Shown here in pieces: positions 27,791 through 54,956 of a stretch of 64,000 nt of DNA (the first letter of the stretch is position 1; each line of letters starts with the position of its first letter). The stretch spans positions 124,001 through 188,000 of IMG/VR virus record IMGVR_UViG_3300031787_007614. The stretch is one strand, 5' to 3'. The notes beneath the pieces were generated by a model. It was not told the DNA's origin. It made no database searches and saw only the letters and a program-made list of their open reading frames with translations. The translations under genes were made by a program, and so were the position numbers.

Positions 27791-28215
27791 TAGCGATACT
27801 CCCGATCTAGTTTAACACTGGTCAATCCAGCAACCATTTGAAATTTGTCCCAGGCATCTTTCACTGCCGGGCGAGATTCAAGTTCACTGTCCGGCAATAC
27901 TGTTTCCAACCAGTATTCTGATCGGCGGCTTGGATGTGTGCCAAACTTGCGTGGCTGGTGTAGTCGACCAGTTTCCCAAAGTTCAATGCTAACACTGCGG
28001 AACTTGTCTTCATCTTCTTTACTGTTGAAATCATAGGCACTCCATTCTGCTCGGCTGCCGCCACCATAGCAGTATCCCGCCCAGATGCCTGCCCACTGTT
28101 CGTCATCTCTGGGATCAAAATCTGTACGAGTAATCAGCACCAACACATCGTCCATGTTCACACTACCTTCCACAATGTCTCGAACGCAACGGCTGTAACT
28201 GAGTCCAATTTTCAT
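27790..28215 (-). CDS. Hypothetical protein
   Basis: ORF track; coupled operon. Confidence 0.8.
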   Translation of the reverse strand: MKIGLSYSRCVRDIVEGSVNMDDVLVLITRTDFDPRDDEQWAGIWAGYCYGGGSRAEWSAYDFNSKEDEDKFRSVSIELWETGRLHQPRKFGTHPSRRSEYWLETVLPDSELESRPAVKDAWDKFQMVAGLTSVKLDREYR

Positions 28216-41079: not shown

Positions 41080-41508
41080 TTAACCAATTTTTTGTTGTAT
41101 TTGTTGCTGACTAACACGGTGCCGAGGGTTTTCTGGTCCTGGAGTGATATTTACGATTGTGTCCTTGTCCCAATTCAGTATATATTTCTTTTGAGGCGCA
41201 TGGACTAAATTGTCACTACCATGATCGGCTAACCAGCATTTTTGCAAGTCTTCACGATCAATTATTGTTATAGTATACAGGATTCCTAGCCCACGAGCAA
41301 GCCCACAGAACAAATTGTCATCTAATAGTTGCCAGGGATCAGGCCAATTGTCACGATCGTCCCAGTGTAAATGATAAGGAATCCAAGGAGTAGAAAACCA
41401 CCATTGATTAATGGTGGTCAAGGCTGATTCAACATCAGCAGTGGCAGCTTGATTTCTCAGTGCGTTCCAAGACTCAAGCCTATCAGCAAAAGTTCTAGGC
41501 CACATCAA
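41080..41508 (-). CDS. Hypothetical protein (possible transglutaminase-like)
   Basis: WPDPWQLL..FCGLARGLG. Confidence 0.65.
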   Translation of the reverse strand: MMWPRTFADRLESWNALRNQAATADVESALTTINQWWFSTPWIPYHLHWDDRDNWPDPWQLLDDNLFCGLARGLGILYTITIIDREDLQKCWLADHGSDNLVHAPQKKYILNWDKDTIVNITPGPENPRHRVSQQQIQQKIG

Positions 41509-43277
41509 ATGCCAAAGTTTGCTACAGAATACCTAATTGAAGCATTTGCACCAGTACTGGTACAAGTGTAACCCACTGAAAGTTCGGTGCCGCTGTCTGC
41601 TGGTGTAAGTGTTACACCAGTTGAGCCATTTTCTGTAAAGTTGTCAACATAACTGAAACCAGTGGTGGTAGCAGCTTGACCACCTGTTACTGTGATTGTG
41701 CCTCTGCGTCTGGTGTCAGATCTAGTGATCACATAATCAAAACTAAATGAAGTGATAGCAGTTTTATCAATCACCACAAGATTGCCGCTGCCATTGTCTA
41801 CCAGTGTGTCTGATATTCCTGCTGATCGTTTCAGCGTTCCAAGATCCAGGCTCATTCCAACGTTAGTGGTGGTTGCTTGCGATTGATAAAACACCATGTC
41901 TCGAGTGTTCTGACTCATTGCAATGGAGTTTGTGGTAGCAAGACTGATTCTAGGATAGGTGCCGCTTTGACTGTCATTGCGCTGAAACAAGTCGCCAACA
42001 GAAATATTGTTGTTGGCATCAATGCTGATGATAGGCGCTGCTGGTAGTGAAGCGCCATTGAAGTGATTGGCCACATCATAAAACACATTGTAACCAGTAG
42101 CATTCAAACTGCATTCTTGAATGATGATACCTTCGCCGTAGATATTATCAAACACATTATGCAACACCTTGAATCCGCTTGGCCCACCATCTACTGGTGT
42201 GGCACTGCCCAACACCACACCCTGATATAGCACATCAAACCATCCGTTGCTGACAGTTACTCCGGCAGTTTGATGGTCAGTGTTAATACCATAAGTCATG
42301 CCAGTGAATTTACATTTGTCCATGGTAATTTCTGTGCAAGGCAATGCAGTAGTTGAACTGAACAAAACACCGCTTACGTCTTCCACAGCATCTTGCAACT
42401 GCACTGTGGTAAGATTGCTGGCAAAGGTCACATTGTCCATACTGACTTTTTGAGCCTTTTCAATCAAACACACATTATGACTGCCTGACTCGGTGGTCTG
42501 GAATGACATGCTGGACACTTCAATGTTTTGTGGAGGGCTTGCGCCACCCACTCCAATGTTGACTCCAGTTTGTTGTTGACTATCGGCAGTTCTAACAACC
42601 AGTTCTGGCAGTGTGGTAGATTCCCAGTAACTTGCGTTGGATAACAAAATACCAGTGGCAGGCACTGCGGCAATACTACGGTAGTAACTGCCTGAACTTT
42701 TGACCAACACACCATCGGCATAGGCAGTGTTGGCAGCCCAAGTTTGCACAGTAAAATAAATAATACTGGAATCAGCGCCTTCGCCGTACAGTTTGGCCCA
42801 GGGCGGAATCAGTATGGTGTCTGTGACAATGTACGTGCCAGCTGGGAAAAACAAACTTCGGCGTATTTGTGTGTTGTTTTGCACACAGAACAATTGGAAC
42901 AGTGCTCGGTTGATAGCATCAGTGTCATCAGTGCTGCCGTCGCCTGTGGCGCCAAAGTCCGTGACAACAGCGTAACTGTCCAGTCTGCTTTGTATGCTTT
43001 GGCTGACAGGATCGCCAGACGTAGCGCCTGTTTGCACTGTATAGCCAGCGGCTGCGCCTTGATAGGTATACGCAGTGGTAAAACTGAGAATGTCTGAGAA
43101 CTCTGTAAGAACTTCGGTATTTCCCACTATTGGAGCACCGTCAGCAATTGAGCCGTTACCAATGTAGAGTTTGCGCTGATCAATTGCCCAGCCAAATTCG
43201 GCTCCAGCTAAGGGTTGAGGCAGGTCTGTCTCGAGTCCGGTTCGTTGGGTTATTCTAGATACTTGTACTATTGCCAC
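41505..43277 (-). CDS. Tail fibre/tailspike with pectin-lyase-like beta-helix
   Basis: VTDFGATGDGSTDDTDAI, FFPAGTY; GTG start with AAGGA SD. Confidence 0.85.
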   Translation of the reverse strand: MAIVQVSRITQRTGLETDLPQPLAGAEFGWAIDQRKLYIGNGSIADGAPIVGNTEVLTEFSDILSFTTAYTYQGAAAGYTVQTGATSGDPVSQSIQSRLDSYAVVTDFGATGDGSTDDTDAINRALFQLFCVQNNTQIRRSLFFPAGTYIVTDTILIPPWAKLYGEGADSSIIYFTVQTWAANTAYADGVLVKSSGSYYRSIAAVPATGILLSNASYWESTTLPELVVRTADSQQQTGVNIGVGGASPPQNIEVSSMSFQTTESGSHNVCLIEKAQKVSMDNVTFASNLTTVQLQDAVEDVSGVLFSSTTALPCTEITMDKCKFTGMTYGINTDHQTAGVTVSNGWFDVLYQGVVLGSATPVDGGPSGFKVLHNVFDNIYGEGIIIQECSLNATGYNVFYDVANHFNGASLPAAPIISIDANNNISVGDLFQRNDSQSGTYPRISLATTNSIAMSQNTRDMVFYQSQATTTNVGMSLDLGTLKRSAGISDTLVDNGSGNLVVIDKTAITSFSFDYVITRSDTRRRGTITVTGGQAATTTGFSYVDNFTENGSTGVTLTPADSGTELSVGYTCTSTGANASIRYSVANFGI

Positions 43278-44013: not shown

Positions 44014-44837
44014 TATGATAAACAACTTGCAATGTGTTGATACAGTGATGTTGGCCACTTTGCAAACAATGACACTCGCGGATTGTGTTCAGTAAGGCTG
44101 TTTTCAGCGTATCCTACACCATGTAATTTGTTTATGTTCAACAAAGTTGGATGTGGATAGATTTCAACTTGATCAACATAAGAAAATGTATCTGGCGGTG
44201 GCGTGGCATTAACACCTTTTTTAAATCTATCAGCATGTGCTGGCTGTATTCTAGTTATTGAAAAAAAATTCACCGTGCTGTGACTGGCTGCTAATTCTGC
44301 CTGACAATATTCAGGTAGATTCACAATACTTGCCGGAGTCTCGCATGGTGGCCAAGATGGATCTTTGATATTGGCATAGTGTTCTTGCCAAAGTTTTATG
44401 TCTTCTGAAAATTCGTAGAACTGAGTAAAACAGTTCTTGTGATTGTCTACTGGAAAAATCAAACTGGTTGTTTTTGTTATATCCACATGCACAGGAATCA
44501 TACTACCGCCACAAACAATCTGAAGCCTAATTATCGGTTGATCGTCAAACTCTGTTAAAAATGTCCATTGAGATCGAATTTCTTGTTCAATCTCAGCAGG
44601 TAACTCAAAGTTAAACATAGTTCCTATTAACTCATTTTTAGGTCCATAAAACGATTGATACTGGGATCGTAAATCTTCTGGAACTCCCATACTTGTATTA
44701 TACTCTAAATCATGCCAATTTAAATTTTCATAAATGTCTTTTTTAGCCATGCGTTGCCAAGGAAGGTTTTTTACCGCGGCCACAATGTCATTTGACAAAC
44801 TGATGTTTGGCAATGTTTGATAGTAAAAAGATCTCAT
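44013..44837 (-). CDS. Putative 2OG-Fe(II) oxygenase-like protein with an internal insertion
   Basis: PVHVD ... LHGV; insert YANIKDPSWPPCET. Confidence 0.5.
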   Translation of the reverse strand: MRSFYYQTLPNISLSNDIVAAVKNLPWQRMAKKDIYENLNWHDLEYNTSMGVPEDLRSQYQSFYGPKNELIGTMFNFELPAEIEQEIRSQWTFLTEFDDQPIIRLQIVCGGSMIPVHVDITKTTSLIFPVDNHKNCFTQFYEFSEDIKLWQEHYANIKDPSWPPCETPASIVNLPEYCQAELAASHSTVNFFSITRIQPAHADRFKKGVNATPPPDTFSYVDQVEIYPHPTLLNINKLHGVGYAENSLTEHNPRVSLFAKWPTSLYQHIASCLS

Positions 44838-45157
44838 ACTCTAAAACTTTCTCCGCAGCCGCAGCGATCGCGTTCATTGGGATTGAGGAATTCAAAACCT
44901 TCATTAAGGCCCTGTCGCACATAGTCTACAGTGACGCCTCTAAGATACACTTCATTTTTCTTATCAACCAATACCACAAAATCTGCTTGGGCATAGTTGA
45001 TGTCTGATTCTGAAGGCGTATACTCTTGCACGTATTCTAACACATACGCTAGGCCTGAGCAACCTGTAGTTTTTACCCCAAGACGAATGCCAGCATAGTT
45101 TTTGGCTTGCAGTAGTCTCTTTACTTTGGTATAGGCCTGATCAGTTATGGAGATCAT
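44834..45157 (-). CDS. iscA: Fe-S cluster assembly A-type carrier
   Basis: GCSGLAY, NPNERDRCGCGESF. Confidence 0.95.
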   Translation of the reverse strand: MISITDQAYTKVKRLLQAKNYAGIRLGVKTTGCSGLAYVLEYVQEYTPSESDINYAQADFVVLVDKKNEVYLRGVTVDYVRQGLNEGFEFLNPNERDRCGCGESFRV

Positions 45158-45527
45158 GCTTTTTGCGATAATCTTCTACAGCAGCCTTTATAGCATCTTC
45201 AGCAAGAATAGAACAATGAATCTTGACTGGTGGCAGCGCGAGTTCTTCAGCAATCTCTGAATTTTTAAGAGCTGCCGCTTGGTCAAGCGTTCGTCCTTTA
45301 ACCCACTCGGTAACAAGAGAGGATGAGGCAATCGCACTGCCGCATCCGTATGTTTTAAACCTTGCGTCTGTGATGATGCCATCTTGTACCTTGATTTGCA
45401 ATTTCATTACGTCGCCGCAAGCAGGTGCGCCAACCATGCCAGTACCAATATCAGTATCACTCTTGTCAAAAGAGCCGACATTCCGGGGATTTTCATAATG
45501 ATCAATAACTTTGTCTGAGTATGCCAT
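45141..45527 (-). CDS. iscU: Fe-S cluster scaffold
   Basis: PACGDVM, GCGSA, LPPVKIHCS. Confidence 0.97.
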   Translation of the reverse strand: MAYSDKVIDHYENPRNVGSFDKSDTDIGTGMVGAPACGDVMKLQIKVQDGIITDARFKTYGCGSAIASSSLVTEWVKGRTLDQAAALKNSEIAEELALPPVKIHCSILAEDAIKAAVEDYRKKHDLHN

Positions 45528-45894: not shown

Positions 45895-46254
45895 TTACAT
45901 TGGACGTTTCATGGCCGATTTGGCCATTTTGTCTACCACTTGTTGTGCTTGAGGAACTGACATTTTGGGTTGTACCGTTTGTTCAGCACCGCCTTTGAAC
46001 ACAATGGGATCAGTTGAGCCGGGTTGGATGGGTTCTAACACATTGCTCAGTGGAGGCTGTCCAACTAGATCCATAATGTTTCTTTGATTGACAGGTACGT
46101 CAAGACTTTGTGCAATAGAGATAAAAGCATCTTGACTGATTTGTTTTTGACTGTTGGTGTCGTCTGCACGACCATTAAGAAAATCTACTAGGCCCAGAAG
46201 TTTGTCTGGGTCAGGTGTTGCACCAGCAAAGGTATCAACTTCAAAGATTTTCAT
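45895..46254 (-). CDS. Hypothetical (putative head-associated) protein
   Basis: N-terminus MKIFEV. Confidence 0.7.
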   Translation of the reverse strand: MKIFEVDTFAGATPDPDKLLGLVDFLNGRADDTNSQKQISQDAFISIAQSLDVPVNQRNIMDLVGQPPLSNVLEPIQPGSTDPIVFKGGAEQTVQPKMSVPQAQQVVDKMAKSAMKRPM

Positions 46255-47159
46255 TATCTACGGCCACGACCCAGTGCGCCTGCTGTGCCCACCGGCTCTT
46301 CAGCAGGAGCGGCCATGTCAGCACCTGCATCGGTAGCAGCAGCATCAAGATCAGCACCTACATCGGCACCCATGTCAGCGCCAGCGGCCATGTCAGCACC
46401 CATGTCAGCGCCAAGTTCGGCACCTAAGTCTGCACCAGCTGTGCTGGGTGCGGCTTGGCCAGTTACCACGCCAAGTGCTTGATCAAGTTGTTGTTTGGCA
46501 CCTTGTAGATTTTGCACTAGGCCAGTGAGTGCGGCTGTGGCGTCTGCGTTGAATTGCGAAGCTTGGTCAATGCCTACTTGATTCTTGATTGAATCAACTA
46601 GAGCAGGCAGTTCTTTAAATTGCATTTCGCTGGCATCTTCCAACATTGATTGCATTTTGTCAACCATGTCTTGTGCAGCCAACACCACTTGAGCTTGTTG
46701 CACTTCAGATTCTTTCAACATGCGATAAGCATTGCGCAAGCGGCTTTCGGCTTTCATCAATGCTGCACCTGCAACAAGTTTTTGTTCATCGGGATTCAAT
46801 GTTTGACCTGCGGCACTCTTTTTAAGAGCAGCAGCCAACTTAGGATCTTTTACTTGTGCGGCTGGTTGAACAGCGCCAGCAGTTGGTTGAGCACCAGGCA
46901 CTGGAACATCCATCTCTTTAAGACGTGTGGCCAAGGCCTGTTCCATCATCATGAGTTTGAGATAAGTTGGATTGCGTTCGCTGGTGTGGCGTGCCATTGA
47001 GCCTTTGTGCTCACCAAGCAGGCCTTGCACCTTGCGAAGCATTTGACGAGTTTGACCAGCGTTGAGACGTTCAACGCTGATGCGTGAGCCAAAATAACTT
47101 TCAAACGTCTTGGTAATCAGACGAGTTTTTTTAGGTGTGGCTAGTTCTTGCAGTTTCAT
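46254..47159 (-). CDS. Putative prohead scaffold/core-like protein
   Basis: Coiled coil and acidic GAD(M/L/V) repeat tail; TAAATA and GAGG SD. Confidence 0.55.
   Translation of the reverse strand: MKLQELATPKKTRLITKTFESYFGSRISVERLNAGQTRQMLRKVQGLLGEHKGSMARHTSERNPTYLKLMMMEQALATRLKEMDVPVPGAQPTAGAVQPAAQVKDPKLAAALKKSAAGQTLNPDEQKLVAGAALMKAESRLRNAYRMLKESEVQQAQVVLAAQDMVDKMQSMLEDASEMQFKELPALVDSIKNQVGIDQASQFNADATAALTGLVQNLQGAKQQLDQALGVVTGQAAPSTAGADLGAELGADMGADMAAGADMGADVGADLDAAATDAGADMAAPAEEPVGTAGALGRGRR
46312..46440 (-). repeat. Degenerate 12-bp repeats encoding GAD(M/L/V)
   Basis: Recurring catgtcagc(a/g)cc on the + strand. Confidence 0.75.
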
Positions 47160-47607
47160 TTGAGAATCCTCTAAGTTGTATATATTTAGCCGAAGATATA
47201 CATTTTTCAAGTTCGGCTGTGACAGCAGAATTTAGAGAAACTTTGGGTTCAAGTTTGGTTTTCACCATTTCTCTAAATTCTGCAGATCTACTGAGTTTGC
47301 CTAGACCACTGCGACAAGCAATGTCATTGTCTAAGAATTGTTTTTTAAAGTCCAACACTTTGATCTGTTGCGATAATGAAGCTTGGTTGTTTTTATCGGC
47401 AATGCACCAAGAAATTGCTGATCGTTTGCTGCCAAAGGATCCCACAAAGTTTGCATAATGCCAAACATTAAACACTTGCTGCTCTGGTGTGATGTGATAT
47501 TTTCCAAACACCACCCATCCACCTGAGTTGTCATCCAAAATCATTTTGTCAATGCTGTGGCGCAGTTCACGCTCGGCCCAGCGTTCAAGTTTTTGTTCTC
47601 GAGTCAT
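47131..47607 (-). CDS. Hypothetical protein
   Basis: ORF track. Confidence 0.75.
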   Translation of the reverse strand: MTREQKLERWAERELRHSIDKMILDDNSGGWVVFGKYHITPEQQVFNVWHYANFVGSFGSKRSAISWCIADKNNQASLSQQIKVLDFKKQFLDNDIACRSGLGKLSRSAEFREMVKTKLEPKVSLNSAVTAELEKCISSAKYIQLRGFSNETARTSHT

Positions 47608-47867
47608 TTGAGTACGTAGTGCGAGACCAGCCAGCCAACTGTGCCGGCTAAAAATGTTATGATTCCCACGCCCCAGGAAATCAATTGATTGTTGCGTTTT
47701 TCAGACATGGCATGCACAATTTCATGCACTTCTTTGACCACTGCCTTGACATCGTCGATGTCTTTTTGCACTGAACTGATTTGCAGTTCCAGTGCTTTGT
47801 ATCGCTCGGCACACAGTTCAACGTGGGCTTCGAGACTTTTCTTTTCAATATCAGTGGTGTCTGCCAT
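47604..47867 (-). CDS. Coiled-coil protein with C-terminal TM
   Basis: TAAATA 7 nt before ATG. Confidence 0.75.
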   Translation of the reverse strand: MADTTDIEKKSLEAHVELCAERYKALELQISSVQKDIDDVKAVVKEVHEIVHAMSEKRNNQLISWGVGIITFLAGTVGWLVSHYVLK

Positions 47868-47869
47868 AA

Positions 47870-48283
47870 TCAGTTATTTACCGTTTCAAACCAAATGTTC
47901 TGGTCAGGGCGCAGTACTGTTTCTACAACTTCCTGCTCGTCTAGCCCAGTTAGCATGGGCACTCCATTGCAGTCTTGGTGCAGTGCCGCAAAAGGATCAT
48001 GATTTCCCGAAATACCAAATGTGCTTTCTGCTTCAACTTCAAAGCTAAAACTCCACACACCTTTGTCACAGCGCGGGGCCTGAATGCGCTCTGGTTGGCT
48101 GCGCAGACTGATTATTTGAATCAATGTTTCAAAGTTTCGCTGTTGATTTCTTGCTCTGTTCCAGTCATTGATGCTGTTGATTGCTTGACCAACTTGATCT
48201 TCAAAGGGAATTTGACCTATGCGAAAATGCCCAGTAATTCCAGTAGGCGAGCAGTCAAAGAGGGTTTTGCACATATACTTCAT
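47870..48283 (-). CDS. Hypothetical protein
   Basis: TAAATA 7 nt before ATG. Confidence 0.75.
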   Translation of the reverse strand: MKYMCKTLFDCSPTGITGHFRIGQIPFEDQVGQAINSINDWNRARNQQRNFETLIQIISLRSQPERIQAPRCDKGVWSFSFEVEAESTFGISGNHDPFAALHQDCNGVPMLTGLDEQEVVETVLRPDQNIWFETVNN

Positions 48284-48300
48284 CGTGTGATATTTACGGC

Positions 48301-48333
48301 AAAAAAATACCCCGGAGTTTTTAATCCCGGGGT
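48301..48333 (-). terminator. Intrinsic terminator
   Basis: ACCCCGG/CCGGGGT stem and T7 tract on the minus strand. Confidence 0.8.
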
Positions 48334-48354
48334 GGTTTAGAACAAGTCTAAAAA

Positions 48355-48744
48355 TTAAGCAGACAGTTTGAAGCCGTTAGCTGTTGCGCTGTCCAACTGA
48401 TAACCAGTGAAGGTAATGTTGGCAGCAGCCAATGCTGTAGCAGCGTTGGCAAAAGCGCCAGTTGGGTAGTAAGCAATTGACAAAGCAGTTGTGTCAACTT
48501 GATACATAGCTACTGTGCAAGTTTGTTGCAGAGCTTGAATAACGTTAGCAACGTATTCTTGCACGCCTGACTGTGTAGCCATGCTGTTGTTGGCAACAAA
48601 GCGAACAAAGTCCAGTTTAGGACCAGCTGGTTGAACTGTAGCAGTAGCGCCAGTAGTGCTTGTAGAAGCAGCGATAGGACCGTTTTGTACGTCTAGTGCA
48701 AATACAGGTTGTGCATCACCATTTACGGGGGTAAGATAAGCCAT
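48355..48744 (-). CDS. Putative abundant virion (decoration-like) protein
   Basis: Ala/Thr-rich; own TAAATA, AAGGA SD and terminator. Confidence 0.55.
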   Translation of the reverse strand: MAYLTPVNGDAQPVFALDVQNGPIAASTSTTGATATVQPAGPKLDFVRFVANNSMATQSGVQEYVANVIQALQQTCTVAMYQVDTTALSIAYYPTGAFANAATALAAANITFTGYQLDSATANGFKLSA

Positions 48745-48807
48745 GATAAATTTCCTTTAAGTTAGTGGTCCTGGTGGACCTGCTTTTATTTAGTCTTTTG
48801 GCAAAAA

Positions 48808-50742
48808 TTATGCCTGTTGCGGATTGTTTTGGGCACGATTTCTAGCAGTAAAATCAAAGCGATTGACTGCTTTGGCATAGCCTGCAGGCGTGGCCATTAC
48901 CCAACCTTCGTGTCCAGGATCTTTCAAATCCAAATTACGTAGTATGTCTAGCTTTAGATCGTGTAACAGAATAAACAGGGTAAATGCAGCAGCCAGACCT
49001 TCTGTGTTTGATGCAGGGCTTTTTAGATATTCAATGATGTTGGCAAATTTTCTTGGGGTGACTTCGGATTGCAACCATTCACCAAACCCTGCCAACAAGT
49101 TGTCAAAGTTGCCTGATCCAATTCTAAAATTAATGTAGTCCACACACAGTTTGGCCAAGTCTGTGATTTGCATGGCTCGCAGTTCGCCAGGATTAAACAA
49201 GGTATCGATGGCAGCACCTTTACTGCGGCGTATTTGTTTGATTTGTTTGATCAAGGCAGTTTGTCCCTTAGATTGTGCAGCGTCTTGAGGTGTAATACCT
49301 TTGCCATAAATTGGCTCAATCAAAAACAATCCTGGTACTTCATTAAATGACACTCTGCTGAGTGGCTGCTTGGGTTCACCTTGATCAGCATACATTGTGT
49401 GCATGGCAATACCTGTGGTGCTGTTGCGAATTCTTTGTCCCAGGGCGCTCTTGGCGGGTATGCGATATTGCACTGTGTTGGGCTTGAACACAAGATTACC
49501 AGCTTCTTCTGTCCATGGCTGTTCGGGGTAGTACAACAAGTCGCCTTTGACATAGCCACGGAAGTTTGTGGGCACAGCCGCTTCTAACTGTGGCCAAAGG
49601 TCAGCATACAATTGTATCAACTTCGCACGTTCACCTTTGCGTGTGCTTTGTATCTGTGCCATCATTCGGGGACTAGTAGCAAGTCCATCGTAGCCTTTGG
49701 CGTCAAACCCTGACCCATCTGTAAGCACAAACTCACCTGTGGCAGGCTTGCGGCCAAATATCACAGCAGGCTTGCCGTCCCACTTCACACTGGTGGTCTT
49801 TTGTGGTGCATCTGCGGCATGCTGGATAATGGCCAGTGCTTCATCCACGCCGCGTGAACCTTTGCGAAACACAAGATCTTCCAGGTGTTCGATGCCTTTG
49901 GCCCGGCCACCCACGCCTGGTTCTTCAGCTTCATAAATTTGATATGGGTTGGCTGTTTCTGTTTCAATCAATGGTGTCATGCCTTGATTTACAATTCTGT
50001 CGCGCAACTTGGCTAGAAAATTCACTTCAGTGTTTTCATTCACAGCACCTGGCTCTTGTAGGCCTTCACGGCCCAGGTATTCACGGAAGTCTGCCAGCTT
50101 GGCATCTCGGTTTTTGTCTCCGGCCAGAGCAGCATAAATGCTTTCCACGTTCTTGAGATTTGCTCTAGTGGCCTTGGGTCCTAGCAGTGTTTTGGCCACG
50201 TAGTCAGGATCCATGCCACCATCTACCAGTTGGTTTGTGGTGCGACTGAACATGCCATTAGCACCCACTTTGAGTCCCTGTTGTTTGGCAATTGAACTCA
50301 TCAACACATTGCGATTCATGCCTTTGTAGGCCGAATCATCTGCACCACCATAGTAAAACTGTCCCCAGTCCAGATTGGGAAAGAACATGAAGTCTGTTTG
50401 CACATAACCATTTTCTGGACGACCATTAATAGGTGTACGTAAGTGTACTTCGCCGCTTTTCTTTACCCAGGCTTTAGGGTCTTCACCGTGACTGGTTGCC
50501 CATTGTGTTAGTTTTGCTGCCAATTGTTCTTTGGATATTTCGCTGGCATCCACTGCCATGTCCATGTCGCCTGATGTAGGTTTACGTCCGGTTGATCCCA
50601 GCCAACGCTCGCGTGGGAATTCTAATCCTGTGAGTGTTTCTAGCCATTGTACTGTGGCTGCTACATCGCTTTGGTTGATACGCCCAGTAAGTGGTTTACC
50701 ATCAGCATCTTTGAATACATTGCCGCCTTCTAATAGTCTCAT
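48808..50742 (-). CDS. Two-domain protein: pol-beta-type nucleotidyltransferase plus KWDG ligase-like domain
   Basis: LGSTGRKPTSGDMDM and VQTDF; VKWDGKPAV and VKGDLLY. Confidence 0.6.
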   Translation of the reverse strand: MRLLEGGNVFKDADGKPLTGRINQSDVAATVQWLETLTGLEFPRERWLGSTGRKPTSGDMDMAVDASEISKEQLAAKLTQWATSHGEDPKAWVKKSGEVHLRTPINGRPENGYVQTDFMFFPNLDWGQFYYGGADDSAYKGMNRNVLMSSIAKQQGLKVGANGMFSRTTNQLVDGGMDPDYVAKTLLGPKATRANLKNVESIYAALAGDKNRDAKLADFREYLGREGLQEPGAVNENTEVNFLAKLRDRIVNQGMTPLIETETANPYQIYEAEEPGVGGRAKGIEHLEDLVFRKGSRGVDEALAIIQHAADAPQKTTSVKWDGKPAVIFGRKPATGEFVLTDGSGFDAKGYDGLATSPRMMAQIQSTRKGERAKLIQLYADLWPQLEAAVPTNFRGYVKGDLLYYPEQPWTEEAGNLVFKPNTVQYRIPAKSALGQRIRNSTTGIAMHTMYADQGEPKQPLSRVSFNEVPGLFLIEPIYGKGITPQDAAQSKGQTALIKQIKQIRRSKGAAIDTLFNPGELRAMQITDLAKLCVDYINFRIGSGNFDNLLAGFGEWLQSEVTPRKFANIIEYLKSPASNTEGLAAAFTLFILLHDLKLDILRNLDLKDPGHEGWVMATPAGYAKAVNRFDFTARNRAQNNPQQA

Positions 50743-51572
50743 TTTTTTGCCTCGGCCACGGCCATTTGTTGTTGTTGTGGGGCACCTTGCAACAGGCCCA
50801 TACTGGCCAGCACCTTGTTTAGTGCTGGATCACGTTGCTGTGGAACCTTGGCAGTAATTCCTAGTTGTTGCGCTGTGAGGCCAGCTCGTTGCGCTGCCTG
50901 TGCCAACTGCGGTTCAGCTGCATTTTTATTTGTGCTGGCTGCGCCAGATACTGGATTGAATTCAACTTCGTTGGCAATGCCATAGCTCATTTTAGCAATG
51001 GAATTCCACAAGTCAGCCAATTTTTTTGCATTGACTCTAGTGGGTTCAGTTATCAACAGTGCGTCAATGGCTTTGTCAATGGTGGCACTCATGTCTCCGA
51101 CCATGTTTCGCAACTGACCTTGATTGGCATCTTTGTCCACCAAACTGGCAGCATTTTTATAGTCGCTGACTGAACGACCGCTCATTCTTTGAAGATTACC
51201 GTTTACCAAACTGATTAATGCTCGTTGCATTTCAATTGGCTGAATGTCCTTGATGCTTTGAACTCCAGCTCGACCAGTTATGGGATTTTTGGCCTGTTGC
51301 ATCATTTGTGTCACTGTGTCTGACCATTGTGCCTGCAGAGTTTTGGCTAGCGCAGCCACAGCAGGTGCCGAAGCAGCCGCGGCTGCGCCGCTTGCTTGTC
51401 CTGGAACAACGCTGGCGCCAGGCGCGGCGTCTGTATTACCACCTGCAGGGATCATGGCTTTGGCTAGATTTTGCCCCACGCCTCCCAAGAATGAACCTGC
51501 CTGTGAACCGGCGCCGCCAGGAGCAAAAACTTCTTGCATGCGGCGGCCATTGGTAATTTCATATATCTGCAT
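50739..51572 (-). CDS. Hypothetical Ala/Gln-rich (putative internal virion) protein
   Basis: N-terminus MQIYEI. Confidence 0.7.
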   Translation of the reverse strand: MQIYEITNGRRMQEVFAPGGAGSQAGSFLGGVGQNLAKAMIPAGGNTDAAPGASVVPGQASGAAAAASAPAVAALAKTLQAQWSDTVTQMMQQAKNPITGRAGVQSIKDIQPIEMQRALISLVNGNLQRMSGRSVSDYKNAASLVDKDANQGQLRNMVGDMSATIDKAIDALLITEPTRVNAKKLADLWNSIAKMSYGIANEVEFNPVSGAASTNKNAAEPQLAQAAQRAGLTAQQLGITAKVPQQRDPALNKVLASMGLLQGAPQQQQMAVAEAKK

Positions 51573-51807
51573 GAGTTCTCCTTACAGATCTAGCAAACTT
51601 TGTGGAATCTTTAAGACGTATGGCATTGAGCAATTTTCTAGTGAGATTTTCAGCCTGATCAGCAGTGTATTCTGTTTCAATTTGCTCTAGCAAACGAATA
51701 GCAGATTCTATCACATTGTTGGCTCTATTTTCAATTATTAGACGACGATCGCGTTCCACATACATGGAATCCAATTCTTCTAACAAGCTACGAGTTTTCT
51801 TTTGCAT
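51559..51807 (-). CDS. Hypothetical protein
   Basis: TAAATA upstream. Confidence 0.75.
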   Translation of the reverse strand: MQKKTRSLLEELDSMYVERDRRLIIENRANNVIESAIRLLEQIETEYTADQAENLTRKLLNAIRLKDSTKFARSVRRTHADI

Positions 51808-51880
51808 TTGCTCGGGGACCTTTGGATTATTTAGCGAAATCTGGTTAGCAATAAATATCTATAACAATCAAGGATTCGCA

Positions 51881-52810
51881 ATGACCAGTCAAATCAACCC
51901 TAACAACATCGACGGAAACTATCCAGTAGCCGGCGTTCCCAACAACACACAAGGGTTTCGGGACAATTTCACAAACACTAGCACTAATTTTCAATATGCA
52001 GCAGACGAAATAACTGCACTGCAAACCAACGCAGTTTTTAAATCTGCACTAACTGGTGCTACACTTGACAACAACATGAATGACAATCTCATTTATGCTG
52101 TAAAATTGCAAGATGTCAGCTATACCTATGTGCCAATTACCACAACTTCTGGCTCAGTCAGCGTGGACTATTCTGCAGGACAATATCAATACGTCAGCAC
52201 AACTGGCAGTATCAGTTTAAACTTTAGCAATTTTCCCACCAGCGGCAGTGCTGGTATAGTACAGCTGGCCATCAACATCACCAATACAGCTTACACTGTT
52301 ACATTGCCGGCTGCTGTGACTTTGGGCATTGTAGGCATTCAAGGCATTAGTTCAAATGTGATCACATTTGCCGCCACAGGAACTTATCAGTTTCAATTTA
52401 CCACTACAGACGGCGGCACCACCGTAACTGTTTACGATCTAAATCGCCCATTGCTGGGCAGCGCAGAATCTGCTGTGGGATACAGCACCGGTACTGGCGG
52501 CACTGTCACACAGGCCACCAGTAAATCAACTGGTGTAACACTCAACAAACGCTGTGGACAAATCACCATGAACAATGCTGCGTTGTCGGCAGCGGCTGAA
52601 GTGAGTTTTACTTTTACCAACAGCACTATTGCAGCCACTGATGTGGTTGTTACTGCTATCAGTTCAGGTGCCACAGCTGGCGCCTACAACACTCACGTTG
52701 ATGCAATTGCCGCAGGCAGTTGTAGAATTAGTATAACCAATTTTTCAGCTGGTCCCCTGTCTGAAGCCATAGTACTAAACTTTGTTGTGATCAAAGCGGT
52801 AAACGCTTAA
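51881..52810 (+). CDS. Putative tail/fibre-associated structural protein
   Basis: TAAATA and AAGGA SD before MTSQIN; Thr/Ser-rich; C-terminal GGTVTQATSKSTGVTLN domain. Confidence 0.7.
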   Translation: MTSQINPNNIDGNYPVAGVPNNTQGFRDNFTNTSTNFQYAADEITALQTNAVFKSALTGATLDNNMNDNLIYAVKLQDVSYTYVPITTTSGSVSVDYSAGQYQYVSTTGSISLNFSNFPTSGSAGIVQLAINITNTAYTVTLPAAVTLGIVGIQGISSNVITFAATGTYQFQFTTTDGGTTVTVYDLNRPLLGSAESAVGYSTGTGGTVTQATSKSTGVTLNKRCGQITMNNAALSAAAEVSFTFTNSTIAATDVVVTAISSGATAGAYNTHVDAIAAGSCRISITNFSAGPLSEAIVLNFVVIKAVNA

Positions 52811-54249
52811 TTACTTTTGATCTGTCCCAGCAGTTGTTTTAGTTTTGAACTTTGAACATCTGCTGTTACTTTAGGCCCCTGCTCCCATGCAGGGGTTCCT
52901 GTGGGTCGGTCCCATTTTGATGGCGAGCTTTCTTCTGGGGCGTCAGCAGCCTTGACCTGGCTGCGGGCCTTGATTGAATCCATAATGGAACTTTGTGGTT
53001 TGTTGTATCCTGTTCCCTCGTCTCCACCTTCATCAGTAATGCGCATGGTTTCAATGTTGTACTCCAAATCAATCTTTTGACCAACGCCGGTCGAGCTTCG
53101 AGACTTCATACACTGGATTTGATACTTGCCACGTTCTTTCATTGCACGACTTGTAAAGATACCAAACACATTATCTGCTGTGTTAATTTTAGAGATACCA
53201 CCTGATATGTGTGAGTGATCAAATTCAATTTCTTCCACAGCTGATCTATTCAACTGCGACGCTGTGACCATCAAGATGCCTAGCTCTTTGGCCAAGTTGC
53301 GCAGTTCTTCTGAAACATACTTGTCTTTCACAAACAAGTCATTGGGGCTGACCTTTGCACTCACAGGCATCAGCAAGTCTAAATAGTCAATCATCACAAA
53401 GTCTACCCGCTTGCCTGTTTGAATTTGATACTCTTTCAAATAAGCACGGATGTCGTTGATATTGCTTTGTGCTGGCAAGCCTTTCACTTGATAGTTGCCT
53501 GACTTCTTGGATACCAGCTTGACCTTAAGTTCAGTGGTGTCTATGTCCTTGCGGATATCTTTTGTTGACATATTGGTCAACATAGCATCAGTACGCAATG
53601 ACGTAAGTTCTTCTGAAAGTTCTAGTGTAATATACACACCACTAAGTCCTTGCTGTAGCCAGTTTAGAGCAATGTTCATCATCACAAGTGATTTGCCTGA
53701 TCCGGATCCACCTGCAAAGATGTTGAGTTCGCCTCTTGAGAATCCACCATACAACAATCTATCCAGTTGTGGCCAACCTGTGCTTACTTGTCCACCCGAG
53801 TTGAAGTACTTCTCAATACGACTCTTAGGATCAGCAAAGTAGTCTGTGCCCATGTCCTTGGTAAGTGATATCTGTACTGCATCTTTGATGAGTTTTTCAA
53901 CTGGATCATACTCGCCTTTTTCCAGTAAGTCTGCGGCTTTTAAGATAGCACGTTCTAGTTCTTGACGTCGAGTAAATGCTTCAAACTCGCCCATGAACCA
54001 ATCAAAGTGCCCTTCGTTTAAATCCGGCACGGCTGCTAATTTAACGCCAGTGGTTGCAGAAATCTGTGTACGTTCCGGCAGGGTCTTGTGTTTGTCTGAG
54101 TGTTCTTTAATAAACTCAGCCGCAGGTCTCAAACTCTTGTCAAAGTTCTGCGGGTTGTAGATGTTTTGAACACGCACATAACTCTGTGCGTCCTCCAACA
54201 TCATTTCTAGAAATAGTCGTTGGACATCAAGTCCGTATTCTTTTAACAA
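52807..54249 (-). CDS. Replicative helicase (DnaB/T4 gp41-like)
   Basis: GGSGSGKS, IDYLDL, TASQLNR, MKSRSS. Confidence 0.95.
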   Translation of the reverse strand: MLKEYGLDVQRLFLEMMLEDAQSYVRVQNIYNPQNFDKSLRPAAEFIKEHSDKHKTLPERTQISATTGVKLAAVPDLNEGHFDWFMGEFEAFTRRQELERAILKAADLLEKGEYDPVEKLIKDAVQISLTKDMGTDYFADPKSRIEKYFNSGGQVSTGWPQLDRLLYGGFSRGELNIFAGGSGSGKSLVMMNIALNWLQQGLSGVYITLELSEELTSLRTDAMLTNMSTKDIRKDIDTTELKVKLVSKKSGNYQVKGLPAQSNINDIRAYLKEYQIQTGKRVDFVMIDYLDLLMPVSAKVSPNDLFVKDKYVSEELRNLAKELGILMVTASQLNRSAVEEIEFDHSHISGGISKINTADNVFGIFTSRAMKERGKYQIQCMKSRSSTGVGQKIDLEYNIETMRITDEGGDEGTGYNKPQSSIMDSIKARSQVKAADAPEESSPSKWDRPTGTPAWEQGPKVTADVQSSKLKQLLGQIKSN

Positions 54250-54956
54250 AGTTTGTCCTTTACGCTTGTTTCAAAAAAATGTCGGTTGCCAGCAGGTCCG
54301 TGGTGCCCGTGCCAACCAAAATTGTCATAGTCTGCCGGCCGATTGATATTTAAGTTGACATCATACATGGAGCCATCAAACAATTTACATCTGTTGTGAT
54401 TTACACAATAATCTAGTATGTATTGGCTTGGTCCCCAGTGATTGTTTGGATCTAAATTTTTACTGAGATTTACAATAATGTAGTTAGCGTCGCAAGAATC
54501 CAACCACTGAGTTATTAAAAATATTTGTCGTAGCACCTGAGTTTCAATCCAACTACGATCACTGATCAACACCGACAATCGATCAAGTTCCTTGTACTGC
54601 AAATTTACCAATCCATGATGACTTGCAACATTACTGGGTTGTGCCTGCCAGGTTTTTGTATCAAATACGGAACTTACCAACGCTGTGTCTTTGTAATCGT
54701 CAAATATAGTAATTCTTTCTAATGGTGGCAGACCAATGACAAAAAAGTCTTGCTCAAAGTTGTATCTTTGCTGTTCACCTATTAGCATTTGACACACACT
54801 GTCAAAACTTATTTTAGATCTGCTACAGTTAATCACAGTACCAACACCCAACTCAGAAGCAGTTAGCCCCCAAAAACTTTCTTGTGGGGAAACACAAACA
54901 TCTGGTGTGCTATAACTGTCGCCAAACACCCAAAGCCTATTGTATTTTTTTAACAA
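54243..54956 (-). CDS. SGNH/GDSL-like hydrolase
   Basis: VFGDSYS; C-terminal GHHGPAGN. Confidence 0.55.
   Translation of the reverse strand: MLKKYNRLWVFGDSYSTPDVCVSPQESFWGLTASELGVGTVINCSRSKISFDSVCQMLIGEQQRYNFEQDFFVIGLPPLERITIFDDYKDTALVSSVFDTKTWQAQPSNVASHHGLVNLQYKELDRLSVLISDRSWIETQVLRQIFLITQWLDSCDANYIIVNLSKNLDPNNHWGPSQYILDYCVNHNRCKLFDGSMYDVNLNINRPADYDNFGWHGHHGPAGNRHFFETSVKDKLC

What the first reader, a model, noticed from the sequence alone, without database searches (positions are those of the whole stretch)
48808..50742. Nucleotidyltransferase fused to a KWDG ligase-like domain, with possible protease sites in the linker
Seen: an N-terminal pol-beta signature (GS-x8-DMD plus VQTD) and a C-terminal KWDG (ligase motif I-like) with KGD (motif III-like). 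The linker carries AVNE, PLIE and QIYE. Established: T4 gp21 cleaves after (L/I)-x-E. Inference: a virion-packaged polyprotein releasing an end-adding and an end-joining enzyme, for example for tRNA/RNA repair against anticodon nucleases or for nucleotide signal chemistry.
Basis: partly seen in the sequence, partly recalled or inferred. Interest (0 to 1): 0.66.

Follow-up and report, generated by a model that had tools for sequence, protein, structure and literature searches.

The report
Phage polymerase-ligase fusion with cleavage sites
A giant phage encodes one protein that joins a small DNA-polymerase-like enzyme to a ligase-like enzyme, with conserved protease-type cut sites at the polymerase borders, so it looks like a previously undescribed two-enzyme break-repair kit that may be cut apart during head assembly.

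Summary
The ORF is real, but it lies on the minus strand (48808-50742, 644 aa). The window belongs to a complete 364-kb T4-like jumbo phage.

- **N-terminal domain (residues 6-230):** it folds with high confidence. It matches family X DNA polymerases (Z 9.3-10.4, palm plus thumb, including ASFV PolX) far better than other Pol-beta transferases (Z up to 6.9).
- **C-terminal domain:** it is Pfam DUF6267. Its 23 best fold matches are all RNA or DNA ligases, and it keeps a KxDG lysine and ligase-like later motifs.
- **Linkage:** the two domains occur fused in both orders and as stand-alone proteins. In PA5oct they are encoded two genes apart.
- **Cut sites:** the raw count of (L/I)xE is at chance, 6 against 5.2 expected. 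Only two such motifs are conserved, and they flank the polymerase domain: LLE|GGN and LIE|T. 34 of 40 diverged fusions carry one just before the ligase domain. The genome encodes a gp21-type protease.

AVNE is not supported. Virion packaging, actual cleavage and the substrate (DNA or RNA) remain untested. I read it as a processed fill-and-seal repair module: a new variant of a known kind.

The parts
48808..50742 (-). Whole ORF, 644 aa plus stop (P0001). A fusion of a PolX-like domain and a ligase-like DUF6267 domain. Its ATG overlaps the stop of the upstream 277-aa gene (ATGA overlap).
50728..50742 (-). M1-R-L-L-E5, a putative 5-residue propeptide ending in a conserved (L/I)xE just before G6-G7-N8.
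   Evidence: L/I at position 3 in 108 of 115 sequences and E at position 5 in 108 of 115. The motif is kept in 29 of 30 proteins where the domain is internal. Phosso, Atu_ph07 and PA5oct homologues start at M-GG or M-SG without it.
50053..50727 (-). Residues 6-230: family-X-DNA-polymerase-like palm plus thumb domain.
   Evidence: AlphaFold2 pLDDT is above 95 over about residues 11-230. The VIA-align top 10 are all PolX enzymes, Z 7.5-10.4 with 146-179 residues aligned (top eight Z 9.3-10.4). Foldseek against PDB gives E about 6e-5 to Pol lambda, mu and beta. Viral PolX models match in BFVD.
50560..50598 (-). G49-S ... S57-G-D59-M-D61: the Pol-beta-type GS motif and the first two catalytic aspartates.
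   Evidence: D61 is invariant and D59 nearly invariant in 115 homologues.
50392..50403 (-). V114-Q-T-D117: the third catalytic aspartate.
   Evidence: V114, Q115 and D117 are at least 90% conserved.
49900..50052 (-). Residues 231-281: interdomain linker, low model confidence apart from one conserved helix (E239-M255).
   Evidence: pLDDT 51-75 over 231-285; column statistics.
49963..49971 (-). First putative cleavage site in the linker.
   Evidence: 85% of 65 aligned sequences; linker enrichment 34 of 40 against a 19% background.
49930..49938 (-). Second putative site, matching in position the second sites in relatives.
   Evidence: Many relatives carry two sites spaced about 5-12 residues apart before the C domain. 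MAFFT did not align this column.
48811..49899 (-). Residues 282-644: DUF6267 domain, a divergent covalent nucleotidyltransferase (ligase-like).
   Evidence: Pfam PF19782, E 1.4e-29. AlphaFold2 pLDDT 93.7. The VIA-align top 23 are all RNA or DNA ligases, Z 5.4-7.8. Foldseek matches are weak, E 0.02, to DNA ligases.
49774..49785 (-). K320-W-D-G323: motif I, with the predicted nucleotidylated lysine.
   Evidence: K, D and G are at least 90% conserved. A split intein sits exactly after this G in a relative.
49540..49548 (-). K399-G400-D401: motif-III-like acidic position. G and D are conserved, K is not.
48922..49281 (-). Residues 488-607: helical bundle inserted between the motif III/IIIa region and motif IV. 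It holds the invariant K597. No OB domain is present.
   Evidence: Secondary structure of the model; invariant K318 in domain numbering.
48859..48909 (-). E612-G-W-V ... K624-A-V-N-R628: motif IV-like and motif V-like elements.
   Evidence: E, G, V, K, V and R are at least 90% conserved. The same block aligns with PA5oct gp228 (hhalign probability 91%).

Best explanation
**What it is.** P0001 is a two-enzyme polyprotein of a T4-like jumbo phage.

- **N-terminal part (residues 6-230).** It is a minimal family-X-like nucleic-acid polymerase with palm plus thumb and no 8-kDa or HhH domains, like ASFV PolX. Its catalytic aspartates are D59, D61 and D117.
- **C-terminal part (residues 282-644, DUF6267).** It is a divergent member of the ligase/capping superfamily. 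I expect it to form a lysyl-NMP adduct on K320 and to seal a break. A helical insertion stands where other ligases have an OB domain.

**How it works.** Across phages the two parts belong to one pathway. The polymerase adds or fills the missing nucleotide(s) at a break, and the ligase seals it.

Conserved (L/I)xE motifs lie at both borders of the polymerase domain. This is the consensus of the T4 gp21 prohead protease, which this genome encodes. I therefore infer that the fusion is cut into separate enzymes during head maturation and may travel with the DNA.

The substrate is more likely DNA, or DNA with a ribonucleotide patch, than tRNA.

**Shown:** the folds, the conserved catalytic residues, the fusion and neighbourhood linkage, and the motif conservation.

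**Inferred:** the catalytic activities, the cleavage, the packaging and the substrate.
For: **Folds**
- The N-domain model has pLDDT 88.4. Its ten best PDB representatives are all PolX enzymes (Z 7.5-10.4, the top eight 9.3-10.4; 146-179 residues aligned).
- Other Pol-beta transferases reach Z 6.9 at most, with about 85 residues aligned.
- Foldseek against PDB and BFVD agrees.
- Among 115 members, the two most recurrent weak Pfam hits are DNA_pol_B_palm and DNA_pol_B_thumb.
- The C-domain model has pLDDT 93.7. Its top 23 structural matches are all ligases, led by NgrRnl at Z 7.8.
- Motif I, III, IV and V positions are conserved.
- A split intein is inserted exactly after KWDG in a relative.

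**Linkage**
- Among 50%-identity representatives there are N-C fusions, C-N fusions and stand-alone genes.
- In PA5oct a DUF6267-like gene lies two genes from the N-domain gene.

**Processing**
- Only two (L/I)xE motifs are conserved, and both sit at the N-domain borders.
- 29 of 30 internal N domains are preceded by (L/I)xE.
- Stand-alone homologues start at M-GG.
- 34 of 40 linkers carry the motif against a 19% background, p about 4e-19.
- Linkers to a third domain carry it too.
- The genome has Peptidase_S77 and a gp23-like capsid protein with three such motifs in its first 34 residues.
- Five genes in the 9 kb around P0001 start M-x-(L/I)-x-E. Genome-wide there are 9 against 2.9 expected, and the pattern is kept in orthologues.
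- The PA5oct N-domain homologue was detected in particles.

**DNA leaning**
- The gene keeps its place next to primase and helicase in this phage and PA5oct, next to the helicase in Phosso and Atu_ph07, and next to gp41 in cyanophage S-PM2.
- No RlaP, Rnl1 or RtcB is present.
Against: - No activity, cleavage or packaging has been measured.
- The C-domain Z scores (5.4-7.8) are middling, and its best matches are RNA ligases rather than DNA ligases.
- The genome already has a canonical ATP-dependent DNA ligase with an OB domain.
- The gene sits among replication genes rather than head genes, and no T4-type late promoter motif is enriched in the window.
- PA5oct gp228, the ligase-like gene, was not flagged by mass spectrometry. 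That particle preparation also held metabolic enzymes.
- A 5-residue propeptide is short for a head-targeting signal.
- The sequences in the motif statistics are related to one another, so the p-value overstates independence.
- One orthologue (L009) has T rather than E before GG.
Confidence: 0.5

Rival explanations
1. The same two enzymes act on RNA. This would be a tRNA/RNA repair kit, analogous to the RlaP-plus-RNA-ligase pairing. The polymerase-like domain restores nucleotides removed by host anticodon or acceptor-end nucleases, and DUF6267 religates the RNA.
For: - The best structural neighbours of the C domain are nick-sealing and tRNA ligases: NgrRnl, REL1, Trl1 and T4 Rnl2 (Z 6.5-7.8), slightly above DNA ligases.
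- It lacks the OB domain typical of DNA ligases.
- The phage has a separate canonical DNA ligase.
- A Pol-beta transferase paired with an RNA ligase is a described theme in jumbo phages (PMC7824862).
- Some relatives are fused to HAD-type NT5C phosphatase domains, which could heal ends.
- A 157-aa AAA_33 kinase is encoded elsewhere in the genome.
Against: - The N domain matches templated family X DNA polymerases over palm and thumb. It matches CCA-adding enzymes, TUTases and other RNA-end transferases only over the palm core.
- There is no hit to the RlaP model PF10127.
- No clear kinase-phosphatase end-healing enzyme was found next to the gene.
- The gene keeps its place beside helicase and primase.
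Confidence: 0.25
2. It is an ordinary cytoplasmic replication or repair accessory that works as an uncut fusion, for example in gap filling and sealing during lagging-strand maturation or recombination. On this reading the conserved (L/I)xE motifs are structural or interaction motifs, not cleavage sites.
For: - The gene lies in the primase-helicase-exonuclease-RNR block and is syntenic with PA5oct and metagenomic relatives.
- In a relative, a split intein rebuilds the fused protein.
- DUF6267 sits beside gp41 in cyanomyoviruses, which lack a g30 ligase.
- No late-promoter signal was seen.
Against: - Homologues that begin at M-GG show that the L-x-E residues are not needed for the fold.
- The motif appears at every kind of domain junction, in otherwise unrelated linker sequence.
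- Residues 1-4 and the linker have low model confidence.
- Neighbouring genes share the M-x-(L/I)-x-E start.
- The PA5oct homologue was seen in particles.
Confidence: 0.2
3. It is not nucleic-acid repair at all. On this reading it is a counter-defence module acting on nucleotides or proteins: the transferase domain makes or modifies a nucleotide signal or nucleotidylates a host protein, and the KxDG domain acts as a capping-like or adenylylating enzyme.
For: - Relatives of either domain are fused in long multi-domain proteins to Tad3 (a Thoeris inhibitor), ART-PolyVal, NT5C, cytidylyltransferase-like and amidoligase domains.
- CD-NTases and OAS appear among the lower fold matches, Z about 5.
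Against: - PolX matches are clearly better and cover two subdomains.
- The ligase matches cover the whole nucleotidyltransferase core.
- Polyvalent fusions combine independent activities, so co-fusion does not imply shared chemistry.
Confidence: 0.05

Closest known systems
ASFV DNA polymerase X (PDB 5hr9) together with the ASFV ATP-dependent ligase (viral base-excision repair pair)
   Same: - It is a minimal PolX of palm plus thumb only. 157 of its 176 residues align with the N domain at Z 9.3.
- It is paired with a dedicated viral ligase to fill and seal short gaps.
- The ASFV ligase is also among the C-domain fold matches (6imk, Z 5.5).
   Different: - Here the two enzymes are fused, or encoded by nearby genes, in a bacteriophage.
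- There is no sequence-level similarity.
- The ligase part lacks an OB domain and has a helical insertion.
- That the ASFV enzymes are virion components is my recollection, not tested here.
RlaP (Pfam PF10127) plus Rnl-type RNA ligases: predicted RNA repair modules of jumbo phages (PMC7824862)
   Same: A Pol-beta-superfamily transferase is genomically coupled to a ligase, and is predicted to restore lost nucleotides before ligation.
   Different: - The N domain does not match PF10127, and no RlaP is found in the genome.
- Its fold is nearest to templated PolX enzymes.
- The ligase is DUF6267, not Rnl1, Rnl2 or RtcB.
Bacterial LigD (polymerase + ligase + phosphoesterase in one polypeptide, NHEJ)
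   Same: - One polypeptide joins a gap-filling or end-adding polymerase to an ATP-type ligase domain.
- M. tuberculosis LigD ligase is among the fold matches (1vs0, Z 5.4).
- Its preference for ribonucleotide patches (my own knowledge) would fit an Rnl2-like sealing domain.
   Different: - The LigD polymerase is of the archaeo-eukaryotic primase fold, not PolX.
- LigD has an OB domain and works with Ku.
- No Ku was looked for here.
Nick-sealing RNA ligases Rnl5/Rnl2/REL1 (NgrRnl 5cot, T4 Rnl2 1s68/2hvq, TbREL1 1xdn)
   Same: - They are the best structural matches of the C domain (Z 6.5-7.8, 170-179 residues aligned).
- They have a KxDG-type lysine motif and no OB fold.
   Different: - Identity is 9-11% and there is no HMM-level match.
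- A 120-residue helical bundle is inserted before motif IV.
- The substrate is unknown.
T4 head-internal proteins processed by gp21 (IPI-III, Alt) and 'polyvalent proteins' of phages (PMC5512222)
   Same: - (L/I)xE sites lie at N-termini and domain junctions.
- The genome encodes a gp21-type protease.
- Relatives are fused to ART and other conflict domains.
   Different: - No capsid-targeting sequence is recognisable.
- Packaging is unproven.
- P0001 itself has only two domains, and the gene is not in the head module.

Membership tests
Family X DNA polymerases | Pol-beta-type palm with a GS motif and three catalytic carboxylates | tested here: met
   G49-S50, D59, D61 and D117 are invariant or nearly invariant in 115 homologues.
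Family X DNA polymerases | Palm plus nucleotide-selecting (thumb) subdomain superposes on solved PolX structures better than on other Pol-beta transferases | tested here: met
   The ten best chains are all PolX, Z 7.5-10.4 with 146-179 aligned residues (top eight Z 9.3-10.4). TUTases, CD-NTases and CCA enzymes reach Z 6.9 at most with about 85 aligned. Foldseek against PDB and BFVD agrees.
Family X DNA polymerases | 8-kDa dRP-lyase domain and HhH DNA-binding (fingers) domain | tested here: not met
   The fold spans only about 225 residues and aligns to Pol beta 139-335. This is as in ASFV PolX, which also lacks these domains.
Family X DNA polymerases | Match to the Pfam PolX models (DNA_pol_B_palm, DNA_pol_B_thumb) above threshold | tested here: not met
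   P0001 has no hit. Only 3 of 115 members hit each model weakly (best E 0.0022 and 0.034), though these are the two most recurrent families. A profile search against PDB sequences finds no PolX.
Family X DNA polymerases | Template-directed gap-filling synthesis | not testable with these tools
   Needs a primer-extension assay.
Covalent nucleotidyltransferases (DNA/RNA ligases, capping enzymes) | Motif I KxDG with the catalytic lysine | tested here: met
   K320-W-D-G; K, D and G are at least 90% conserved. An intein is inserted right after it in a relative.
Covalent nucleotidyltransferases (DNA/RNA ligases, capping enzymes) | Motifs III, IIIa, IV and V in order | tested here: inconclusive
   Conserved G400-D401, F419-x-P-N, E612-G-x-V and K624-x-V-x-R628 fit the order. 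They were assigned by eye rather than by residue-level superposition.
Covalent nucleotidyltransferases (DNA/RNA ligases, capping enzymes) | Nucleotidyltransferase fold | tested here: met
   The top 23 of 48,161 representatives are all ligases (Z 5.4-7.8, 144-187 aligned). Foldseek is weak (E 0.02). The Z values are middling.
Covalent nucleotidyltransferases (DNA/RNA ligases, capping enzymes) | C-terminal OB domain (DNA ligases, capping enzymes) | tested here: not met
   The model ends after motif V. A helical bundle (residues 488-607) is inserted instead.
Covalent nucleotidyltransferases (DNA/RNA ligases, capping enzymes) | Formation of a lysyl-NMP intermediate | not testable with these tools
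   Needs a labelling assay with ATP, GTP and NAD+.
Pfam DUF6267 (PF19782) | HMM score above the gathering threshold | tested here: met
   104 bits against a cut-off of 27, residues 284-635.
RlaP (PF10127) | HMM match | tested here: not met
   No hit for P0001 or in the genome. RlaP is not among the recurrent families of the 115 members.
Substrates of T4 gp21-type prohead protease | (L/I)xE at the cut, conserved and exposed | tested here: met
   L3-x-E5 and L258-x-E260 are the only conserved instances. Both lie in low-confidence segments at domain borders.
Substrates of T4 gp21-type prohead protease | Cognate protease encoded by the phage | tested here: met
   Peptidase_S77, E 2e-24, beside the portal, scaffold and gp23-like capsid genes.
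Substrates of T4 gp21-type prohead protease | Presence in the prohead or virion and observed cleavage | not testable with these tools
   Only an indirect hint: PA5oct gp231 was found by ESI-MS/MS in a particle preparation that also held unrelated enzymes.

The most novel reading that the evidence does not exclude
The fusion is a head-packaged polyprotein. The gp21-type protease cuts it inside the prohead into a free PolX-like polymerase (new N-terminus GGN...) and a free DUF6267 ligase. Both are then ejected with the genome as a ready-made fill-and-seal kit. The kit would mend nicks, gaps or defence-inflicted breaks in the incoming DNA before any phage gene is expressed. The neighbouring genes that start M-x-(L/I)-x-E would belong to the same injected set. 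As a corollary, DUF6267 would be the undetected ligase of T4-like cyanophages.
Probability: 0.3. Interest if true: 0.8.

Novelty: new variant of a known kind. Interest (0 to 1): 0.62.

Why it matters
- **Two unannotated families get a function to test.** DUF6267 has thousands of metagenomic members and is conserved in T4-like cyanophages. The unnamed N domain has more than a thousand. Both get concrete, testable biochemical assignments, a ligase and a minimal PolX-like polymerase, and are shown to be one functional module.
- **Phage PolX.** I found no report of a phage PolX-ligase fusion in the held paper library.
- **Cyanophage ligase.** Cyanomyoviruses are described as lacking a DNA ligase homologue (PMC2984593). 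DUF6267 beside gp41 is a candidate for that gap.
- **Protease substrates.** The junction motifs offer a sequence-only way to recognise substrates of T4-type head proteases in jumbo phages. They also hint at a set of packaged enzymes.
- **Possible tools.** Small polymerases and OB-less ligases are also of interest as laboratory reagents.

Tried and rejected
- **Plus-strand reading of the coordinates.** It is full of stops.
- **Sequence searches against solved structures.** Neither the single protein nor the profiles gave anything meaningful.
- **NCBIfam.** No hit.
- **PHROGs.** Only an unnamed family.
- **Near-identity DNA search in cultured phages.** No match.
- **Raw count of (L/I)xE as evidence.** Rejected, 6 against 5.2 expected.
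- **AVNE as a site.** Rejected, not conserved.
- **T4 late promoter TATAAATA.** One match against 1.66 expected, uninformative.
- **Sigma-70 and terminator scans.** Nothing decisive.
- **Hidden N domain next to cyanophage DUF6267.** hhalign of A1 against S-PM2d138 and S-PM2d140 found none.
- **Phosso gp446 and the Atu_ph07 upstream gene as DUF6267 homologues.** Motif-level resemblance only, not significant by hhalign; BLASTP was also negative.
- **The 82-aa upstream protein against PA5oct gp230.** No similarity.
- **Predicted complex of the N and C domains.** No verdict (score 0.00, after four unreachable attempts). It is not evidence either way.
- **Canonical RNA-repair partners in the genome.** None of RlaP, Rnl1 or RtcB was found. 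An AAA_33 kinase is too generic to interpret.
- **Literature searches for DUF6267 and for a phage PolX.** Nothing relevant.
- Not used.
Full report
**Observation**

The coordinates hold a single ORF on the minus strand (48808-50742, ATG start, 644 aa, P0001). The plus-strand reading is broken by stops.

- GS-x8-DMD at residues 49-61
- VQTD at 114-117
- KWDG at 320-323
- KGD at 399-401
- AVNE at 233-236
- PLIE at 257-260
- QIYE at 268-271

**Setting**

The window is part of a 364,404-bp virus record with direct terminal repeats, rated complete. It is a jumbo phage.

The genome has T4-type head genes:
- a gp23-like capsid protein
- a Peptidase_S77 (gp21-type) prohead protease
- scaffold and portal genes

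It also has a canonical ATP-dependent DNA ligase with an OB domain, at window 28212-29585.

P0001 lies in a minus-strand block that runs primase, DnaB helicase, two small genes, P0001, several unknowns, NifU-like and Fe-S genes, exonuclease, a tailspike-like gene and RNR. The block is syntenic with Pseudomonas phage PA5oct (genes 0223-0244) and with metagenomic relatives.

**Families**

- Pfam sees only DUF6267 (PF19782), over residues 284-635 with E 1.4e-29.
- Residues 1-285 match no Pfam or NCBIfam model.
- No paper in the library mentions DUF6267.

The protein is abundant in metagenomes:
- A search of 1.84 billion 50%-identity representatives gives 1,539 hits at E up to 0.001.
- The word-indexed search gives thousands more.

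**Architectures among representatives**

- N-C fusions like this one are the most common.
- C-N fusions exist: P0378, P0387, P0416, P0441 and P0451.
- Both domains also occur alone.
- Longer proteins carry either or both domains together with other domains: cytidylyltransferase-like (recurrent), NT5C, DUF5661, Tad3, ART-PolyVal and Amidoligase_2.

In cultured jumbo phages the N domain is a separate gene:
- PA5oct gp231, Phosso gp447 and an Atu_ph07 gene.
- PA5oct gp228, two genes upstream of gp231, matches the DUF6267 profile over motifs IV-V (hhalign probability 91%, E 1e-6).
- The genes directly upstream in Phosso and Atu_ph07 show only motif-level resemblance.

Fusion in both orders together with this neighbourhood is good evidence that the two parts work in one pathway.

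**N domain**

I built an alignment of 115 diverged homologues (A1). D61 is invariant there, and D59, D117, G49, S57, G58, H100, Q115 and R167 are nearly invariant.

AlphaFold2 gives pLDDT 88.4 overall. It is above 95 over about residues 11-230 and low beyond 230, except for one helix.

VIA-align against 48,161 PDB representatives:
- The ten best chains are all family X polymerases: Pol beta, lambda and mu, TdT, Thermus and Deinococcus PolX, Leishmania Pol beta, and ASFV PolX.
- They score Z 7.5-10.4 with 146-179 residues aligned over palm and thumb; the top eight score Z 9.3-10.4.
- TUTases, CD-NTases, OAS and CCA-adding enzymes score 6.9 or less. They align only about 85 palm residues.

Other searches agree:
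- Foldseek against the PDB gives E about 6e-5.
- In BFVD, after uncharacterised phage homologues, giant-virus 'DNA polymerase family X' models follow.
- At sequence level, the two most recurrent weak Pfam hits among the 115 members are DNA_pol_B_palm and DNA_pol_B_thumb. Each is hit by 3 members, below threshold.

The domain is more specific than that, though: a minimal PolX-like palm plus thumb without the 8-kDa and HhH domains, as in ASFV PolX.

**C domain**

The alignment (A2) has 96 sequences. The following positions are nearly invariant:
- K320, D322 and G323
- G400 and D401
- F419, P421 and N422
- E612, G613 and V615
- K624, V626 and R628

K597 is invariant.

The model has pLDDT 93.7. 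Its 23 best VIA-align matches are all covalent nucleotidyltransferases:
- NgrRnl, Z 7.8 with 179 residues aligned
- REL1, Z 7.0
- Trl1
- T4 Rnl2, Z 6.6
- T4 Rnl1
- archaeal, human, T4, T7, Chlorella-virus, ASFV and LigD DNA ligases, Z 5.4-6.0

Foldseek is weak (E 0.02) but is also dominated by ligases. These Z values are middling. The case rests on the consistency of the match list together with the conserved motifs.

There is no OB domain. Instead, a helical bundle (residues 488-607) is inserted before motif IV.

A relative (locus L015) carries a fractured gene:
- The first ORF ends in KWDG followed by an N-intein.
- A 253-aa ORF follows.
- A third ORF starts with a C-intein ending in HN and then continues SPAVIFGR. 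This restores the family consensus KWDGSPAxIFGR.

Inteins home to catalytic motifs (own knowledge). This marks KWDG as the functional core. It also shows that the fused protein is what gets made.

**Cleavage sites**

T4 gp21 cutting after (L/I)xE is established knowledge. The raw count of this motif in P0001 is at chance, 6 against 5.2 expected. Conservation tells a different story.

1. Only two instances are conserved in the whole family. L3-x-E5 is found in 98% of 110 sequences and is always followed by GGN. L258-x-E260 is found in 85% of 65 sequences and is followed by a small residue. None is conserved in the C domain.
2. In 29 of 30 proteins where the N domain is internal, the three residues before GGN are (L/I)xE. 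The upstream sequence is otherwise unrelated.
3. The stand-alone homologues of Phosso, Atu_ph07 and PA5oct begin at M-GG or M-SG, with stops upstream. The L-x-E residues are therefore not needed for the fold, and the mature N-terminus would be the same.
4. In 34 of 40 representative N-C fusions an (L/I)xE lies within 25 residues of the C-domain start. The figure is 19% for background windows of the same proteins (binomial p about 4e-19). That p-value overstates independence, because the sequences are related.
5. Many relatives have two sites in the linker, as P0001 does (LIE|T and IYE|A).
6. Linkers to a third domain often carry the motif too. In the long multi-domain relatives the sites fall at domain borders.
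7. The capsid protein has three such motifs in its first 34 residues.
8. Nine genes in the genome start M-x-(L/I)-x-E, against 2.9 expected. Five of them lie within 9 kb around P0001, including the overlapping upstream 277-aa gene. Orthologues at about 50% identity keep the pattern.

I take this as moderately strong indirect evidence for processing by the gp21-type protease. It implies residence in the prohead.

Direct evidence for packaging is thin:
- PA5oct gp231 was found by ESI-MS/MS in particles. The same preparation held 7 'virion-unrelated enzymes', and gp228 was not flagged.
- No T4 late-promoter motif is enriched here.

**Mechanism**

The best reading is a fill-and-seal module: a PolX-like enzyme adds the missing nucleotide(s) at a break, and a ligase-like enzyme seals it.

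Arguments for DNA:
- The PolX fold.
- The conserved place beside primase and/or helicase in this phage, PA5oct, Phosso, Atu_ph07 and cyanophage S-PM2.

Arguments for RNA:
- The RNA-ligase-like neighbours of the C domain.
- The lack of an OB fold.
- The presence of a separate DNA ligase.
- The described RlaP-RNA-ligase theme in jumbo phages.

Against the RNA reading, the domain does not match RlaP. The genome also lacks RlaP, Rnl1 and RtcB.

A ribonucleotide-patch mode of DNA repair, as known for LigD and for Pol mu with Lig4 (own knowledge), would reconcile both sets of clues. It remains speculation.

**Comparison and novelty**

The kind of system is known: a polymerase or transferase coupled to a ligase for break repair. 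Examples are ASFV PolX with its ligase, LigD, and RlaP with Rnl ligases.

Four things are new here:
- this particular pairing
- the two families themselves
- their spread in jumbo phages
- the junction motifs

I rate it a new variant of a known kind.

**A side result**

DUF6267 is the conserved cyanomyovirus gene beside gp41 and MazG (S-PM2d138). A 'possible cytidylyltransferase' lies three genes on. Those phages are reported to lack a g30 ligase homologue (PMC2984593).

**Limits**

- All functions are inferred.
- The models are predictions.
- I had no residue-level superposition.
- The complex prediction gave no verdict.

Noticed in passing
window 45895-54788 (minus strand): Five genes in 9 kb start M-x-(L/I)-x-E. 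They are the 119-aa gene (MKIFE), the 301/318-aa gene (MKLQE), P0001 (MRLLE), the 277-aa gene (MQIYE), and a 181-aa reading of 54243-54956 (MLIGE). Genome-wide there are 9 against 2.9 expected. Orthologues in L009 and L010 keep the pattern. They may form a set of protease-processed proteins.
   Followed up: partly
L015:6001-9177: A fractured DUF6267 gene in a relative. The first ORF has the N domain plus KWDG followed by an N-intein. Next comes a 253-aa ORF with no Pfam hit, possibly a homing endonuclease. The third ORF has a C-intein ending HN and then the rest of the ligase domain.
   Followed up: partly
window 28212-29585 (minus strand): A canonical ATP-dependent DNA ligase (DNA_ligase_A_M plus an OB domain, 457 aa). 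The phage therefore has a second, conventional ligase.
   Followed up: yes
L006:4986-8790 (Synechococcus phage S-PM2): DUF6267 forms the N-terminal 390 aa of S-PM2d138, right after gp41 and MazG, and a 'possible cytidylyltransferase' lies three genes downstream. Cyanomyoviruses are reported to lack a g30 ligase, so DUF6267 is a candidate for it.
   Followed up: partly
proteins P0495, P0464, P0476, P0401, P0385 (metagenomic relatives): Long multi-domain proteins join the N domain, the DUF6267 domain or both to Tad3 (a Thoeris inhibitor), ART-PolyVal, Amidoligase_2, NT5C, DUF5661 and cytidylyltransferase-like domains. This resembles polyvalent proteins. The role of the recurrent cytidylyltransferase-like partner is unexplained.
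   Followed up: partly
window 50739-51572 (minus strand): A 277-aa protein rich in Ala, Gly and Gln with no family match. Its stop overlaps the start of P0001, so it is probably translationally coupled. Orthologues sit in the same place in L009, L010 and L015.
   Followed up: no
window 51665-52810 (plus strand): The only plus-strand gene in a long minus-strand block. It is rich in Thr, Ser and Gly and matches phrog_18251 (function unknown). Its called start overlaps the 82-aa minus-strand gene, so the true start is probably internal.
   Followed up: no
window 41505-43277 and 44834-45527 (minus strand): A tailspike or pectate-lyase-like gene and a NifU-like / Fe-S assembly pair sit between the exonuclease, RNR and replication genes. 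The same odd mix is conserved in L009.
   Followed up: no
L009:6842-9037 and L009:19562-21926: In a 51%-identical relative the DnaB helicase carries an intein. The RNR large subunit is split, with intein and HINT signals.
   Followed up: no
genome G000:264150-264368 (outside the window): A 72-aa protein starting MLLQE lies between the portal and the prohead protease genes. It is a candidate small prohead-core protein with the same N-terminal motif.
   Followed up: no
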